From positions 152,210,001-152,274,000 of the forward strand of contig OZ296648.1 in assembly GCA_965655095.1 (NCBI GenBank): a stretch of 64,000 nt of DNA. Reading direction: 5' to 3'. Below the pieces are notes generated by a model. It did no database searches, was not told where the DNA came from, and saw nothing but the letters and a program-made list of their open reading frames with translations. Positions 28,571 to 43,189 of this stretch are shown in pieces. The DNA comes from Haplodiscus bocki. Taxonomy: Eukaryota. The translations under genes and the position numbers were made by a program. The stretch's first letter is position 1; each line of letters starts with the position of its first letter.

Positions 28571-31500
28571 TTTAGCAACTTAACCTCTTACTCACTTCAA
28601 ATTGTGAGCCATGTGCTTTCCCATAACATAAATGGTCCCAGAAGTCTTGGAGGCATTGAAAATGTTCATTATTTTTTGTTGGGTTTATGTATGATAAGTT
28701 TTTTTGCACTTTGATTGAAAAAAGCAAAGTTTTAACAAAGCAATACATCCAATTGAAGTGTAATGAACCTTATACTTTAGAAAATAACTATTTAAACGAC
28801 CATTGTCTTGATAGAATAAATGAGTAAAGAAGCCTTGCTTTACACCTAATTCTAGAAGCAAATGGAAAACAGTTTTACGACATTTACCTTACACATTTTA
28901 TGGAAGAATGGACGTTGAATTTGAAAAATTCTGTAGGAGAGTCTTGAAAAAATCCTTTTTAAGATAAAATTGATATCTTTAAGCTTTTGGCCCAGCTGAA
29001 TTGAAATGAAGATAGAGAAGATCCTATGGAAGCAGTTAAACAGAAGGACTTTTTCAGATGTTGATTGGGATGAACTATGGATTGATTGGGAAACGGCTAT
29101 AGAAACAAGTAATTCAAGTACAAATGTTTTTTAGAATGCCTCTAATGAGTTGAAGCTTGATAAAAAAAACTGCTGTGGGAGCTGTTAAACGACGAATGTA
29201 TAATTGAATGTATACACTTGATGAATTGGGGAAAAATGAAAAAATGATGTTTCTCGAAGCATTTTCAATACAGAGACTTTTAATGAACTTTTTGGAAGGA
29301 TGAGTTCATTCGCTCCTTTTTGTGCCATGCAAAAACTAGGCGTCCCGGCGTTTCGACCAAGCCACAGGAGGTTTAGGCCTATCATCGGTCTGTTCCACGC
29401 AGAATATCATGCATCAATATTGCTTTTATAACAACTCTGAGTATGATCATCAGTCTTTTGCGTCACAGTTGAATTAGTCAAAGACAGCATGGCCTGGTGG
29501 GAGTGAACCCCAAACACTTCGGTTAAGCCTCATTTTTAGTTATTGACTTAACAACTCTACCGGAAGAAGTGAATTGTGGAGCCAAAGCAGCAATGAATAA
29601 CCTACGCACATACTTTTTTTGGAAGTTTAAAAAATTTTCTGTGGACACACCCCCTAAAAAAATCAAAAACAACTTTGTCTACATAACCACTTGGAATTTC
29701 AAACTTGAATATGTAGAATTACTCACCTGGAAACCCAATTTAATCATATGCACCATCACACACAATCACTTTCACTGAAAACTGTGACGATCAGAAATTC
29801 AAATAGAAGTTTACTTCCACTACTCTACATTTCGATGGAAACCACTCTTTTAAAGTTCTTTGAATTTTACTAGTTCTCCTCGATGTTTACAACCACGACT
29901 TTTTTTGGTAATAGAAACTGAGGACCAGAAGGAGGAACGGTGAGACAAACAGAGTGAGTCCATCGAACGCTACTACCCTACAGGTTGTTGACCTTTCCGA
30001 AGAGAGAATAAAACCTAAGGAAAAAACAACCCACCAGCCCACTCTATCTCATTTTTTTTAAACTACCTAAAGCAAAACAACAACAAGAAATCGAGCAGGA
30101 AAAAGTGCGTTGTGTTTTGACACATGAAGCTTATTTTCAGAGTGATTAGGAAACAAAAATAACGCAATTCATGCCGAGAATGAAAGTTGGTCCGATTACT
30201 TCTCAAGGATAGCTTTCAATTTGGATCAGTTAACAAACCGCAGAGATAAATACAATTCTCGCACATTAACATTGTAAAAACTACGGAAGAAAAACAAATC
30301 AACGAACTCAAACAGAAGTTTTGCTCTCGTCCAAAAGCTCGCGGAGTTAAACAGTTTTGCCGACATTAAAAACAACCATTTTGACAGTGGCCTTCCACCA
30401 TTTTTTGAATGAACTTAAACAAAGAAAATGAGTTAATTATTGCCAATTAAAAAGTTTCAAAGTATGACACTTTAAAAGAAGCTGTCGTGATTCCCTAGTG
30501 GAATTTAGAAAACAAAGTCTTCTTCAAAAAACTTTCCAAAAAGGTTGGAATTTTCGTATCGTGCAGTTTTTATTGTTAAGCGATTTGAGTATTTTAAAGA
30601 ATCTTCTTTGCAAAAAAAATATTGTGGATTTGACAATCTTCAAAAACACTTTTTTACATTGAATTAACGAACTTGTCATTACAAGTAGACCTTTTTCTTC
30701 TTTGATGCACTCAAAAAAAACTAGATAAGGTTGGCTGGAAAATCTGCACGCGAGAACTTGGTTCACAAAGTGTTGTCATTGAAAATTTTGACTGAAAAAC
30801 ATCAATTTTTGAAAACCACTGTCCATATACATTGATGTGGAGGCGCAAAGGTATGGTAAGTTACTCAGTTTCAGAAGAATGTGTATTCAAATCCCGACCG
30901 ACAAAGACAAACAGAAATGCACTCTGTATTATCATACGGGGTTTCAACTAGTTTGCCTCAACGATTGTAAGATGTTTTTTAAAATTGGTCTTCAGTCCCA
31001 CATAAGATTATTGTTGATAAGAAGTTTTAAAAAGTTCCATCACAATACCCGCAAACACATCAGTCATTTTTACCTGCACCCACACTGTGAAATTCAGCAA
31101 CGCGACTTGAGTCAAAGAAAAGGTAAATTTTGGATCTTGAGTAATAGACTTGATGCAATGAAAAAAGGTGCAAACAATTGCCAGTGAATTTCGTGTTCAC
31201 ATATCATTAGGCAAATGTGATGACTTTTAAAATTCTGTTGCCAGAGTTTTTGAAAAAAGCTGTACCTGGGAAACTATACAGAGCATTTTGTTGAGCTCAC
31301 TTAGAGCAGATCACTCGAGATCACGAAGTATTTTTTCAAATCAGGTCAAGAAACAAAATTTCAATTATCAATTTTAACATTCTCAATGCGGAACATGCAG
31401 TTCAACCTCATAGTAAAAAAAGGAGGCAACAATTGTAACATCAGGTTGATTTCTAGGTTGTTGTTTCTTTCGAAGGGCTCGAGATCTCAAGCAGTCTTCC

Positions 31501-31791
31501 CAACACCACAAAAAAGCATTCAGACCTCGACTCACACATTGAAAAAACCTAAATGCGCAGATGGAATGTTTGTCATTGAGGAGCTTCGTTGATTTAAGGA
31601 GTGTGTGAGTGCTGATTAAGGAGTCACAAAAAAATGCAAAAAAAAGAAAAAGAAAGACATCATGAGCGTTGATGGAACGGGAGGAAAAAAATTCGCTCAC
31701 AAAGAGTTCACTGGCATCAGTGACTTTGAAATGGACTGTATTTAAAAAGCAACTAGTCAAAATCCAAAGAAGGCCGGGGTACAATTCTCTA

Positions 31792-31863
31792 AATTTCGTG
31801 GAGCAAAAGTGGAAAATCTGACACCTTGTGTGCAGTTTGCGTGTTCAATGTACCTCGAGGTCA
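31792..31863 (+). pseudogene. tRNA-Trp-derived pseudogene
   Basis: TTCGTGGAGCAA...TCTGACACC...TTGCGTGTTCAATGTACCTCGAGGTCA aligns ungapped to tRNA-Trp. Confidence 0.7.
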
Positions 31864-40242: not shown

Positions 40243-40314
40243 TGATTCGTGGTGCAGTTGTTGCGCACTTGAATACAGATGGCAAAGTTCCATTTCCATA
40301 GGATGGCGGGTCCA
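40243..40314 (+). pseudogene. tRNA-Trp-derived pseudogene
   Basis: TGATTCGTGGTGCAGTTGTTGCGCACTTGAATACAGAT...GGCGGGGTCCA; in array register. Confidence 0.55.
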
Positions 40315-43189
40315 CAAATACTTTGAGTTCATTTCCACCCATCTGGTTCTGAAACATTTCAATTACTTCTTTAAAGAGGCTCAAACGAAGAAATCATTAG
40401 ATCAGTTCAATTGTAGTGCTGTACTTCAGCTTCTGTTGAAACGACGGAACATTTTGAACGACCTGTCAAAGAGGTGGTCACTGTGACCTTGACACTCATT
40501 TTGGCAGGCACTCAATTTGAGTCAATACCTTTGTCACTACCAACCGAAGTGTAGGAAAGCGATTCAATATAGGAAAAAGTGCCCCGATTTGCTACTGAAG
40601 TGTCTCAAAAAAACAATGTTCACAAGGCGTTTGCTGAAGTTGATGACTATCAAAGGGACTGGTTTAGCTTTATGTAGACTTCACTGTCTGAGGCACCTCA
40701 CTTAGAGTTTCTTGGAGCTCTAGTTTAGCACATAACCACAAAACCAAAAGTTTTATGTTCAAATCAGGTCATTGTCGAATAATTTGTCCATCAATGCCAG
40801 TCTTTCGAATGTCGAACACGTAGCTGATTAAACTAGAAACAGCAAGAGAATTGTTATATATTTTCAACTCAGGAAGAACTTTTGCATTTTTCTACAGTCA
40901 AAAATTTTTAAAGTTTTTCATACATTTTGAAAAACCATTGTGATCCCAAGGAGACTCGACTTTCATTTCTAAAGTCTTTTCTCAAAGACTAAAGCAAAGA
41001 AATGGTCATTAGTGTCCAAGAACTTGCGAGATTAGTTCACTTGAAACCCATCATTCGCTAATGGAACTGCACGATTAGACTTGTTCCTAGTAGTTTTCTG
41101 ATGTTCAAAGAAAGTGTTGAGTAAAGCTGAGAAATTATCAAAAATAACCACCAACATTCACGCCGCGGCGGAAAGATACCGCTTCCGACTGGATTTCTGA
41201 GCGTTGGAAGGTGTGTGTTAACTTCTGAAGGATTTGCGTCCTGATTTTTCAAGTGAAGTTGAAACTACGAACAGGCTCTAATTTGACTTGATCTAATTTG
41301 AGTACTCAGATAATTTCTACATTTTTTCAATAATTTTAATGAGAATACAACTAATCTCTATTTGTCTAAAACTTCAACTCTAGATTGATATCTGGATCAA
41401 AAAATTCAAATTCCATTAAAGTCACAAATGGGAACTGTATACAAAGTTATATTTCAACCAATGACGTTTCAGGAACTTCTCTAAATTGCGTGTTTATTGT
41501 ATACATGCGGTTTTTATTTAAAAAAAAACTTCAAAACATGTTCATAAGAAAGTTTATCACGTTTCAGTGGGGTTCCAGTTTTATGATATAACTTAATGTC
41601 TGCAAAATCTTTTGTTCTCAGTGAAATGTTTCGGTTCTAGGAAAGTTCATTTTCAAAAAACTTCTCCTATTTCTCAGGATTTATCTGTAAATTATAATAA
41701 TTTGATCATATAAATCTTATGGGTTCGACTTTTAATTTCAGGTGGAGAAGAGTCATAAAGTATCAAACAATTGAGATTGATATCAGTTTATTGATCAATT
41801 GAACATTTTCCGAAAGTTTCAAAGTTGTGTTTTAGTTTGGGATTTTTAACACATGAGATTCTTACTTTATTCTGTTGTTCACATCAATGCATGAACTTGG
41901 ACGAACAACATGACAGTTCTCTTTGATGTCGTAATTTGACATAATTACATGTCAGTTCACTTGAATGACAGAGTTCAACTTGCTAAGGTGGCCATCAGAC
42001 ATGCAGGGGATTGCTAACATGTCAACGTGAGAACTAGTTCAAACTTATGAGAGGAAAAAGGAGTAAATGAGCAGTTTAGAGTGAGTTCTCGAATTCTTTG
42101 CAAATCGAGCAATTTTGCTGACTTTTCCCTCATTCCAAGTCTTCGGTTACAACAATGGTTTTTTTGTTCACTAAGTTTCCGTTACTTTGCTTTCGTTGCC
42201 ACAAAAAGAAAGTTGGAAACAAATCAAGCAAGTGTGAAGAAAAAGTGAACAATTTTGACTAGTTCCGACTGAAAAAAGGTGAAAATTGCAGGATATGCAG
42301 TTTTACATTAGAAACTCAAAATTTGGGCCGAAAAAATCTTTCCTCGGAATTGAAGAAGCTTCAGAAAATTGGTTCAAAAAATTTTCCTCAGAGAAGTGGT
42401 TCAAATTGTTTTGGATTTTGGATCATACGGAGATTTTTTCTCGAGTTTCAGAGTATTTTTAGAGAAGTTTTCAGTAGAAACATTTTTGGTTTGAACAAGT
42501 TATATAAAATTGAACTCCTTTTTTCAAAATTGATTATATCATGAAGGTACTAAAAGCTTTTGGGAGAACGAAAAACAAAGCAAGTAAAAACCGGGGGATA
42601 TACAAAGCACTTGTGATTATAAAGGTAATGTTTTGAAGTGAACAATTAAATTCAACACAGAAGAAGATATTTTAAAATCACAAAAAAATTATGGGTATTA
42701 TAACTTCAAACAAAGAGTTTTCGAATGTAAAATAAATTTTGTGAGATTAAAGGTTTTTGGTTAAAAGAATCCAAAGTTACTTTGTTCAAAAGACTTTTCG
42801 GGACCAGGTTTCACACTAAAATGCGTCAAATCTTTGCTTGCATCAGAGCAATAACTTGGGTGACGCAGAGGTGAAGCAGTTGAAGCATGAGTTGTTGAAA
42901 AGTGACAGTTAAGGCAGAGGGTTTTTCCTGAACCAGTGTGGGACCCAGTGCAATTGGGTTTATTCGACTGAGCAGTGGCAAGAAAATTGGATAGAAATCA
43001 CCGGTTCTTCAGGAAACATGAACAATCATATTAAAATCTTTACCAATGGAATGTGATATACCATTCTGCAGAGCCAGAGAATGCAGAAACATGGATTGCA
43101 AAACAGAAGAAGCAAAGCGAAAGAACCAAATGTTCAGAAATTCAAAAAGCCTTACTCTACTAATCCGGAGATCTGGCGGCAGACATGAT

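What the first reader, a model, noticed from the sequence alone, without database searches (positions are those of the whole stretch)
30150..41215. Cryptic ~1.23-kb macrosatellite built from triplets of tRNA-Trp(CCA) genes
Seen: a region with no real ORFs holds a regular period (36556, 37783, 39013, 40243). Each unit has three co-oriented 72-nt tRNA-Trp-like sequences: type A at ~37470, 38700, 39942, 41158; type B as listed; type C at ~38247, 39476, 40706. Spacer motifs are also shared. Units are strongly diverged, yet unit length is almost invariant. Inference: a fossil tandem tDNA array, or a tRNA-derived satellite with a higher-order ~400-bp x3 structure. It could act as a TFIIIC/Pol III chromatin boundary or a source of tRNA-like small RNAs.
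Basis: partly seen in the sequence, partly recalled or inferred. Interest (0 to 1): 0.75.

Follow-up and report, generated by a model that had tools for sequence, protein, structure and literature searches.

The report
Decayed edge of tRNA-Trp gene array
This stretch is the old, dead margin of a 140-kb tandem array of tryptophan tRNA genes, whose repeat units each carry two or three ruined tRNA copies; it is a real but ordinary example of how such gene arrays grow, reshuffle and rot.

Summary
Window 36556-41250 has a 1.23-kb period (8-mer lag count 70 at 1220-1239 bp, z about 10; controls at most 18). No single copy is a tRNA by ARAGORN or Rfam. The majority consensus of the 20 relics matches the living gene at 66 of 72 positions, and ARAGORN calls it tRNA-Trp(CCA).

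The stretch is not an isolated curiosity. It is the most decayed end of one co-oriented tRNA-Trp array domain, window coordinates 14.4 to 157.9 kb (C1:152.224-152.368 Mb), broken up by non-array gaps, at least one of them a transposon insertion. The younger part, 71-158 kb, has a 1.335-kb unit with one good gene and two relics. Its spacers are homologous to the fossil spacers.

The fossil 1.23-kb unit is a rearranged variant (t1-t3-probably t2). It was amplified after all three copies were already dead. Stem pairing is at chance level and B boxes are eroded, so nothing points to a present function. No RNA runs were available.

Tandem tRNA arrays are published for cnidarians, and this scan has already noted several in this genome on other DNA. 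Verdict: a new member of a known kind, of low to moderate interest.

The parts
30432..41250 (+). Fossil tRNA-Trp array: eight head-to-tail units with 20 scored tRNA-Trp relics (a 21st, weak, lies in unit 2), interrupted once by a transposon
   Evidence: CM hits. nhmmer hits of the live-unit HMM. Local-alignment test.
30834..31791 (+). Unit 1, a dimer (958 bp): t1-type relic at 30834, t3-type relic at 31287
   Evidence: Scores 21 and 18 against a null maximum of 14.5. S1 and S3 sub-HMM hits. CM 11.3 bits at 31287.
31792..33171 (+). Unit 2, live-type trimer (1380 bp): t1 at 31792, weak t2 at about 32225, t3 at 32684
   Evidence: One colinear nhmmer hit, window 31794-32863 to live HMM 3-1105, E 3e-17. 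CM 25.4 bits at 31792 and 6.8 bits at 32225.
33172..35641 (+). Unit 3, a dimer (about 928 bp without the insertion): t1 at 33172, t3 at 33631, split by the pogo-like element
   Evidence: CM 19.6 and 34 bits. S1 and S3 hits.
34078..35618 (+). Decayed pogo/Tc5-type DNA transposon inserted just upstream of a t1 relic. It has 30-nt terminal inverted repeats, and TA lies on both sides.
   Evidence: Inverted repeat 34077-34106 / 35589-35618, 93% complementary. Pfam HTH_Tnp_Tc5 E 2.6e-11 and DDE_1 E 1.4e-12 on broken ORFs at 34534-35203. Sequence read directly.
35642..36555 (+). Unit 4, a dimer (914 bp): t1 relic at 35642, t3 relic at 36105
   Evidence: S1 HMM 12-432 matches 35653-36072, E 4e-15. Local scores 15 and 14.
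36556..37782 (+). Unit 5, 1227 bp, rearranged trimer: B at 36556, C at 37020, A at 37469
   Evidence: CM 41 bits (B) and 7.5 bits (A). Local scores 35, 13 and 20. S1 hit of 74 bits.
37783..39012 (+). Unit 6, 1230 bp: B at 37783, C at 38247, A at 38702
   Evidence: CM 38.8 and 33.3 bits. Local scores 26, 12.5 and 25.
39013..40242 (+). Unit 7, 1230 bp: B at 39013, C at 39476, A at 39945
   Evidence: CM 15.8 and 27.2 bits. Local scores 16.5, 20 and 22.
40243..41250 (+). Unit 8, the last one, truncated after A: B at 40243, C at 40706, A at 41159. The array stops at about 41250.
   Evidence: CM 29.6 and 18.4 bits. Local scores 20.5, 16 and 15. No array hits between 41250 and 70896.
14414..15641 (+). 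Outlying remnant of the same array: end of one unit (14421-14604), then t1 at 14760 with about 880 bp of live-type spacer
   Evidence: CM 30.8 and 54.9 bits. nhmmer 14760-15641 to live HMM 1-888, E 2e-35.
16133..16606 (-). Inverted fragment of a unit: t1 relic plus S1 spacer, and a unit tail
   Evidence: CM 22.7 bits on the minus strand at 16366-16437. Minus-strand nhmmer hits.

Best explanation
The stretch is the oldest, no longer homogenised margin of one of this genome's two tRNA-Trp(CCA) tandem gene arrays.

Shown: the younger part of the domain has a repeat unit of about 1.335 kb, made of three paralogous sub-units of about 460, 460 and 417 bp. One sub-unit keeps a recognisable gene (t1); the other two hold relics (t2, t3).

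Inferred: an ancestral monomer of about 450 bp, one tRNA-Trp gene plus spacer, was tripled to make that unit. Unequal crossing-over then expanded the unit, deleted sub-units and reshuffled them.

Shown: the window holds dimers (t1-t3, 914-958 bp), one live-type trimer (1380 bp) and four copies of a rearranged 1.23-kb trimer (t1-t3-probably t2). The common ancestor of those four copies already had all three tRNA copies inactivated.

Inferred: the 1.23-kb unit therefore spread as dead DNA, in the manner of a satellite. Exchange with the active part of the array then stopped. At least one transposon inserted into the array (the pogo-like element). The larger gaps hold non-array DNA, which other first-reader notes of this scan call Gypsy elements; I did not check that. 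The units then drifted neutrally to about 35% divergence from the gene, and to 51-67% identity between units, depending on the method.

I see no present function. The relics look like neutral DNA.
For: - Homology to the gene: CM hits, local-alignment test, and a relic consensus matching the live gene at 66 of 72 positions that ARAGORN calls tRNA-Trp(CCA).
- One domain: a continuous + strand array from window coordinate 70.9 to 157.9 kb with a period of about 1335 bp. There are no hits in the 80 kb upstream of the window or in the 20 kb searched beyond 164 kb.
- Same build: live units have a main gene at 0 and weak relics at +460 and +920.
- Spacer homology, fossil against live: B+spacer matches t1+S1, E 6e-39 (spacer alone 1e-20). 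C+spacer matches t3+S3, E 2e-16 (spacer alone 3e-6).
- Decay gradient: adjacent-unit identity is 0.57-0.67 in the window, 0.65-0.93 at 71-94 kb, and up to 0.998 at 124-154 kb. It falls again to 0.68-0.70 at the far edge. CM scores rise in the same direction.
- Neutrality: stem pairing is 0.545 against a shuffle value of 0.534 +/- 0.016. Of the changed pairs, 191 are broken and 33 are compensatory. Transitions to transversions are 229:334, and CpG observed/expected is 0.91.
- Amplified when already dead: each type has 9-13 derived substitutions shared by at least 3 of 4 copies. These include anticodon C33A in B and in C.
- Not dispersed: the fossil unit and the live spacer match only this locus.
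- A transposon insertion inside the array.
- The same kind of array exists for Arg, Lys, Thr and Trp elsewhere in this genome, and is published for Hydractinia and Nematostella (PMC11067881).
Against: - The link of type A to live t2 is weak: spacer-only E 0.004, and 6 shared derived sites with t2 against 3 with t3. The exact rearrangement path is therefore uncertain.
- Shared derived substitutions could partly reflect gene conversion between units rather than inheritance from a dead ancestor.
- B-to-B spacing of 1227/1230/1230 bp is tight for units this diverged. I attribute that to a low indel rate and cancelling indels (other landmarks give 1217-1243), but I did not model it.
- Absence of function is inferred from sequence only. 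No RNA or chromatin data were available.
Confidence: 0.87

Rival explanations
1. The relics are kept as extra-TFIIIC-type sites or tDNA-like chromatin boundaries, or as a source of tRNA-like small RNAs. On this view the regular spacing and the surviving B-box-like motifs are functional.
For: - Four relics keep 9-10 of 11 B-box positions: C40706 10/11, and C37020, C31287 and B30834 9/11.
- The B-to-B period is very regular.
- The array sits between non-array gaps and a tRNA array that still holds recognisable genes.
- A human tRNA tandem repeat has been proposed as a boundary element (PMC4041453).
Against: - Most B boxes match at only 2-6 of 11 positions, and A boxes at 4-10 of 12. Anticodons are mostly mutated.
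- No excess of base pairing over shuffles.
- The tRNA parts are no better conserved than one-branch neutral decay predicts: identity to live is 0.65 in the tRNA part and 0.45 in the spacers, and the spacers have diverged on both branches.
- Upstream units vary from 914 to 1380 bp, so spacing is not maintained.
- No RNA run holds the stretch.
Confidence: 0.06
2. The repeats are cargo or copies of a mobile element: a tRNA-derived SINE, or a Helentron-type element with tRNA-derived internal repeats, as noted elsewhere in this genome. On this view they are not a decayed chromosomal gene array.
For: Earlier notes of this scan describe Helentron elements in this genome that carry tRNA-Ile-derived tandem repeats. 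tRNA-derived SINEs are common in animals (established knowledge).
Against: - The fossil unit matches only itself genome-wide, and the live spacer matches only this locus.
- The domain is about 143 kb, co-oriented, and colinear with an array that still holds recognisable tRNA-Trp genes.
- The units abut head to tail, with no separate element ends or flanking target-site duplications visible between them in the sequence.
- The other Trp array, at 117.8 Mb, shares only the tRNA plus about 15 nt.
Confidence: 0.02
3. The tRNA resemblance is chance or low-complexity similarity within an unrelated diverged tandem duplication.
For: ARAGORN and Rfam find no tRNA in the window.
Against: - CM E-values go down to 2e-12, and all hits within the 30.4-41.25 kb array are on one strand.
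- 16 of 20 sites exceed the maximum of 3000 null windows.
- The consensus is recognised as tRNA-Trp(CCA).
- Spacers are homologous to those of a live tRNA-Trp array.
Confidence: 0.01

Closest known systems
Tandem tRNA gene arrays of cnidarians (Hydractinia symbiolongicarpus and H. echinata; Nematostella vectensis)
   Same: Evenly spaced, co-oriented arrays of tens to hundreds of copies of one tRNA gene. [quoted passage not shown] This genome shows the same for Arg, Lys, Thr and Trp.
   Different: [quoted passage not shown] Here the units are 51-67% identical, none is a recognisable tRNA, and the unit is a rearranged three-part higher-order repeat. I did not test whether this genome is itself a cnidarian; earlier notes of this scan suggest so.
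Decayed tRNA arrays already noted by this scan in the same genome (tRNA-Trp at about C1:117.8 Mb, tRNA-Arg(CCT), tRNA-Ile(UAU))
   Same: Single-isotype head-to-tail arrays in which nearly all copies are drifting. I saw the 117.8 Mb Trp array independently, with a period of about 498 bp.
   Different: This is a different locus with unrelated spacers; only the tRNA plus about 15 nt is shared. The unit is a 1.23-1.34-kb trimer rather than a monomer. This stretch is far more decayed.
Satellite DNA with higher-order repeats that evolve by unequal crossing-over, homogenised in the centre and diverged at the edges
   Same: Sub-units of the same type in different units share derived changes that other types lack. 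Identity is highest in the array interior and lowest at both edges. Unit variants arise by deletion or reshuffling of sub-units.
   Different: Only eight units lie in the window. The repeat derives from a Pol III gene and is continuous with an array that still holds recognisable copies of that gene. There is no evidence of a centromeric or structural role.
Human 1q23.3 tRNA variable-number tandem repeat (Darrow and Chadwick 2014, PMC4041453)
   Same: A tandem repeat whose unit contains tRNA genes, flanked by retro-element sequence, and proposed as a boundary element.
   Different: The human unit is 7.3 kb, GC-rich and binds CTCF, and its tRNA genes are intact. Here the unit is 1.23 kb, 39% G+C, and its tRNA copies are dead. 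Binding was not testable.

Membership tests
Tandem tRNA gene (tDNA) array | Co-oriented head-to-tail units, each with a tRNA-derived segment | tested here: met
   All significant CM hits from 31 to 41 kb are on the + strand at regular offsets. The lag peak has z about 10.
Tandem tRNA gene (tDNA) array | Spacers homologous between units and with the rest of the array | tested here: met
   nhmmer of the live-unit HMM against the window and of the fossil HMM against the live consensus, E down to 6e-39; spacer-only E 1e-20.
Tandem tRNA gene (tDNA) array | Units contain tRNA genes recognised by standard tRNA finders | tested here: not met
   ARAGORN finds 0 genes in the window. Rfam finds none at the gathering threshold, nor a tRNA hit at E up to 10 over 29000-43000. 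The feature is met in the adjoining part of the same domain, with 17 ARAGORN calls. The window part is therefore a pseudogene array.
Functional tRNA-Trp gene | Cloverleaf pairing and a CCA anticodon | tested here: not met
   Pairing is 0.545, equal to the shuffle value. 7 of 20 relics keep CCA, but each of those is only 41-51 of 72 identical to the gene.
Higher-order-repeat satellite | Sub-repeat types are distinct lineages, closer across units than within a unit | tested here: met
   9-13 type-specific shared derived sites per type. Identity between type consensuses is 51-61%.
Higher-order-repeat satellite | Long, homogeneous, high-copy array | tested here: not met
   Only four 1.23-kb units, 51-59% identical over their full length. 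The unit is unique in the genome.
tRNA-derived SINE or other mobile element | Many dispersed copies with their own termini | tested here: not met
   Genome-wide DNA searches return only this locus. That search tool scores only its best candidates, so the result is a lower bound.
TFIIIC-bound boundary or ETC site | Intact B box | tested here: inconclusive
   B-box identity to the live gene is 2-10 of 11. Four relics reach 9 or more.
TFIIIC-bound boundary or ETC site | TFIIIC occupancy or insulator activity | not testable with these tools
   No ChIP data, and no RNA runs for this organism in the run index.

The most novel reading that the evidence does not exclude
The dead relics are not inert. 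Under this reading, a few retained B-box-like motifs make the fossil array a string of extra-TFIIIC sites. These would insulate the active tRNA-Trp array from the neighbouring non-array (reportedly retrotransposon) stretches, or the relics would feed a small-RNA pathway. The near-constant 1.23-kb spacing would then be maintained rather than accidental.
Probability: 0.05. Interest if true: 0.55.

Novelty: new member of a known kind. Interest (0 to 1): 0.25.

Why it matters
The locus gives a clean, self-contained picture of the life cycle of a tRNA gene array on one chromosome stretch. It shows a young, homogenised core next to progressively older units, rearranged unit variants, transposon invasion, and final decay to sequences that only a consensus can identify.

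It also shows that standard tRNA finders miss these relics completely. Counts of tRNA-derived DNA in such genomes are therefore underestimates.

Among the candidates scored, this genome's best tRNA-Trp copies lie only in two arrays on one chromosome, each with a single copy identical to the consensus. That is worth knowing for annotation. None of this changes current understanding of tRNA arrays.

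Tried and rejected
- ARAGORN and Rfam, at both the gathering and E up to 10 thresholds, found no tRNA in the window. A model specific to this genome was needed.
- Tandem Repeats Finder missed the array. Its longest period is 500 bp and the units are too diverged.
- Plain blastn of a fossil unit against live units gave only marginal hits. Profile HMMs were needed.
- I looked for CpG-driven decay. CpG observed/expected is 0.91, and CpG sites are only slightly more changed than others (0.46 against 0.38), so methylation-driven decay is not the explanation.
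- I tested whether the non-array stretch at 16.6-30.4 kb is a copy of the element at 41-74 kb. There is no similarity, and its ORFs have no Pfam hits. Its nature stays unknown.
- I tested whether the 117.8 Mb Trp array is the source of this one. The spacers are unrelated.
- The search for RNA evidence found DNA runs only. Laying contigs confirmed the DNA but says nothing about expression.
- I did not date the decay in years, because no mutation rate for this organism is at hand.
- The assembly gap at 12598-12797 was left untouched.

Full report

Yes. Shared 8-mers in window 36400-41300 pile up at lag 1220-1239 bp: 70 counts, against a mean of 2.9 per 20-bp bin, z about 10. There is a second peak at 2460. 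Three control stretches of the same window and 20 shuffles never exceed 18. The repeat finder independently gave families spaced 1218-1243 bp apart with 65-84% identity in the best-kept segments. Tandem Repeats Finder, ARAGORN and Rfam all saw nothing, so the array is indeed cryptic. Contigs from two samples of one study carry the stretch with a single SNP. It is therefore real DNA and not an assembly artefact, although one of those runs may be the assembly's own source.

**2. Are the repeats tRNA-Trp-derived?**

A search of the window's own genome (1.5 Gb) with the Rfam tRNA model showed large single-isotype tandem arrays:
- Arg-TCG, two genes per 1431 bp;
- Lys-TTT, steps of about 480/970/1440 bp;
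- Thr, about 755 bp.

Using the relic at 36545-36630 as a query, I found ARAGORN-recognised tRNA-Trp(CCA) genes in two places on the same chromosome. One is an array of about 498-bp period near 117.8 Mb. The other is a + strand array only 67-93 kb beyond the window's end.

I aligned 18 of these genes and built a covariance model with the cloverleaf. I then scanned the window with filters off. Results:
- Type B: 36556, 37783, 39013, 40243 at 41, 38.8, 15.8 and 29.6 bits.
- Type A: 38702, 39945, 41159 at 33.3, 27.2 and 18.4 bits; 37469 only 7.5 bits.
- Further + strand copies: 31792, 33172, 33631, 14414, 14760.
- One minus-strand copy at 16366.

The model missed type C. In a local-alignment test against the live gene, however, all 20 predicted relics (8 B, 8 C, 4 A) reached or exceeded the 99th percentile of 3000 null windows, and 16 exceeded the null maximum.

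Single relics are 34-51 of 72 identical to the gene. Their majority consensus is 66 of 72 identical, keeps the CTCCAGA anticodon loop, and is called tRNA-Trp(CCA) by ARAGORN. No single relic in the window, and no per-type consensus, is called.

**3. The wider setting**

The same model run on 120 kb downstream and 80 kb upstream shows one co-oriented domain. An HMM of 37 downstream units run over the whole 264 kb agrees. In window coordinates:
- remnants at 14.4-16.6 kb;
- the fossil array at 30.4-41.25 kb;
- continuous array at 70.9-106 kb and at 123.4-157.9 kb.

That is roughly C1:152.224-152.368 Mb. The searches found nothing in the 80 kb upstream or in the 20 kb searched beyond 164 kb, and nothing beyond 157.9 kb in the HMM scan.

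The downstream period is about 1335 bp. Each unit holds one good gene (50-107 bits), plus weak relics at +460 and +920 (15-25 bits).

Adjacent-unit identity over the first 430 bp:
- 0.57-0.67 in the window;
- 0.65-0.93 at 71-94 kb;
- 0.79-0.97 at 94-105 kb;
- up to 0.998 at 124-154 kb;
- 0.68-0.70 again at the far edge.

This is the centre-homogenised, edge-decayed pattern expected of arrays that evolve by unequal exchange.

**4. Homology of the spacers, and the unit map**

Fossil spacers match live spacers. Examples are 36557-36989 to HMM 2-430, 31794-32863 to HMM 3-1105, and 14760-15641 to HMM 1-888.

A profile of the four 1.23-kb units, searched against the live consensus, gives three blocks:
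- fossil 2-437 to live 2-429, E 6e-39;
- fossil 335-630 to live 787-1092, E 2e-16;
- fossil 895-1129 to live 427-690, E 5e-8.

With the tRNA parts removed:
- B spacer matches S1, E 1e-20;
- C spacer matches the S3 head, E 3e-6;
- A spacer matches S2 only weakly, E 0.004.

Shared derived sites point the same way: C with t3 6 against 1 with t2, and A with t2 6 against 3 with t3.

So B = t1 is firm, C = t3 is good, and A = t2 is tentative. The 1.23-kb unit is not colinear with the live t1-t2-t3 unit.

Upstream units differ again:
- 30834 and 31287: dimer, 958 bp;
- 31792, about 32225 and 32684: live-type trimer, 1380 bp;
- 33172 and 33631: dimer of about 928 bp, once a 1.54-kb pogo/Tc5-type element with 30-nt inverted repeats at 34078-35618 is removed;
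- 35642 and 36105: dimer, 914 bp.

Register-shifted unequal crossing-over between paralogous sub-units explains such variants. This step is an inference.

**5. Dead when amplified, and neutral since**

Within units 5-8, each type shares 9-13 derived substitutions in at least 3 of 4 copies. These include the anticodon change C33A in both B and C, and changes that break stems. The ancestor of the 1.23-kb family therefore most likely already had three dead copies. Gene conversion could mimic part of this signal.

Further points:
- Stem pairing in the relics is 0.545, against 0.534 +/- 0.016 for column shuffles. Of the changed pairs, 191 are broken and 33 compensatory.
- Transitions to transversions are 229:334, and CpG observed/expected is 0.91.
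- Identity to the live consensus is 0.65 in the tRNA part and 0.45 in the spacer. That is expected if the live gene is frozen by selection while both spacer lineages drift. It does not indicate constraint on the relics.
- B boxes match at 2-10 of 11 positions.
- No RNA run exists for the stretch.

**6. What it is not**

The fossil unit and the live spacer match only this locus genome-wide (the tool gives lower bounds). It is therefore not a dispersed SINE or transposon cargo. The 117.8 Mb Trp array shares only the tRNA and about 15 nt after it.

**7. Comparison and novelty**

Tandem tRNA arrays with similar spacers are published for Hydractinia and Nematostella (PMC11067881). Earlier surveys covered eukaryotic tRNA gene clusters, including Entamoeba tandem arrays and zebrafish clusters (PMC2888827). 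A human tRNA tandem repeat has been proposed as a boundary element (PMC4041453).

This scan has already described decayed tRNA-Trp, -Arg and -Ile arrays in this same genome on other DNA. One of these is the 117.8 Mb Trp array, which I met independently. The present stretch is thus a new member of a known kind.

Its particular points are the extreme decay, the rearranged three-part unit, and the visible age gradient along one domain. Interest is low to moderate.

**8. Limits**

- The organism was not identified here.
- The non-array stretches between array segments were not annotated, apart from the pogo-like element.
- The assignment of type A to t2 is weak.
- The tightness of the B-to-B spacing (1227/1230/1230, while other landmarks give 1217-1243) was not modelled.
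- The assembly gap at 12598-12797 was left alone.

Noticed in passing
L026:6735-6806 and L023:9896-9970 (C1:152360735 and 152333896): Two otherwise good tRNA-Trp-type copies in the young part of the array are called tRNA-Ser(CGA) and tRNA-Cys(GCA) by ARAGORN, yet score 88.4 and 70.5 bits with the Trp model. For the Ser(CGA) copy the anticodon change is visible in the sequence (CCA to CGA). For the Cys(GCA) copy I infer an anticodon change from ARAGORN's call. Whether either is expressed or charged is unknown.
   Followed up: partly
G000:C1:152340697-152340768 and G000:C1:117802122-117802193: Among the 40 best-scored of 199 candidates genome-wide, only two copies are identical to the tRNA-Trp consensus, one in each of the two arrays on this chromosome. 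All other scored copies differ by at least one base.
   Followed up: partly
window 34078-35618: A decayed pogo/Tc5-type DNA transposon with 30-nt terminal inverted repeats, TA on both sides, and a transposase broken into at least three frames. It is inserted just upstream of a tRNA relic.
   Followed up: yes
window 16133-16606, minus strand: An inverted fragment of an array unit lies about 500 bp after the + strand remnant at 14414-15641. This is a small local inversion or a head-to-head junction.
   Followed up: partly
window 16600-30400: A 13.8-kb stretch between two array remnants has no array homology, no ORF over 146 aa, no Pfam hits on its longest ORFs, no internal long repeats, and no similarity to the element at 41-74 kb. 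GC skew is negative over 18-26 kb. Its nature is unknown.
   Followed up: partly
L021 (window coordinates 97450-99930); also 81802, 90986, 92200, 154726 and 155943: Several units in the younger array are 1211-1251 bp instead of about 1335 bp. In two units that I checked, the relic offsets are +818 and +367. This points to deletions of about 95-100 bp in the first or second spacer, not to the rearranged 1.23-kb type of the window.
   Followed up: partly
window coordinates 106000-123400 (L022-L023): A roughly 17-kb interruption of the otherwise continuous young array, with no array homology. Its content was not examined.
   Followed up: no
window 38016-38033, 39240-39257, 40477-40494: A spacer motif containing the short palindrome GTCACTGTGAC is among the best-kept spacer segments of the fossil units, 84% between two copies. 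The matching 15-nt stretch of the live S1 consensus (positions 226-240) is as well kept as the tRNA part, 0.68. This could be chance.
   Followed up: partly
window 32966-33015 and 12598-12797: An (AG)25 microsatellite lies inside unit 2 of the fossil array. There is also a 200-N assembly gap, which I left untouched.
   Followed up: no
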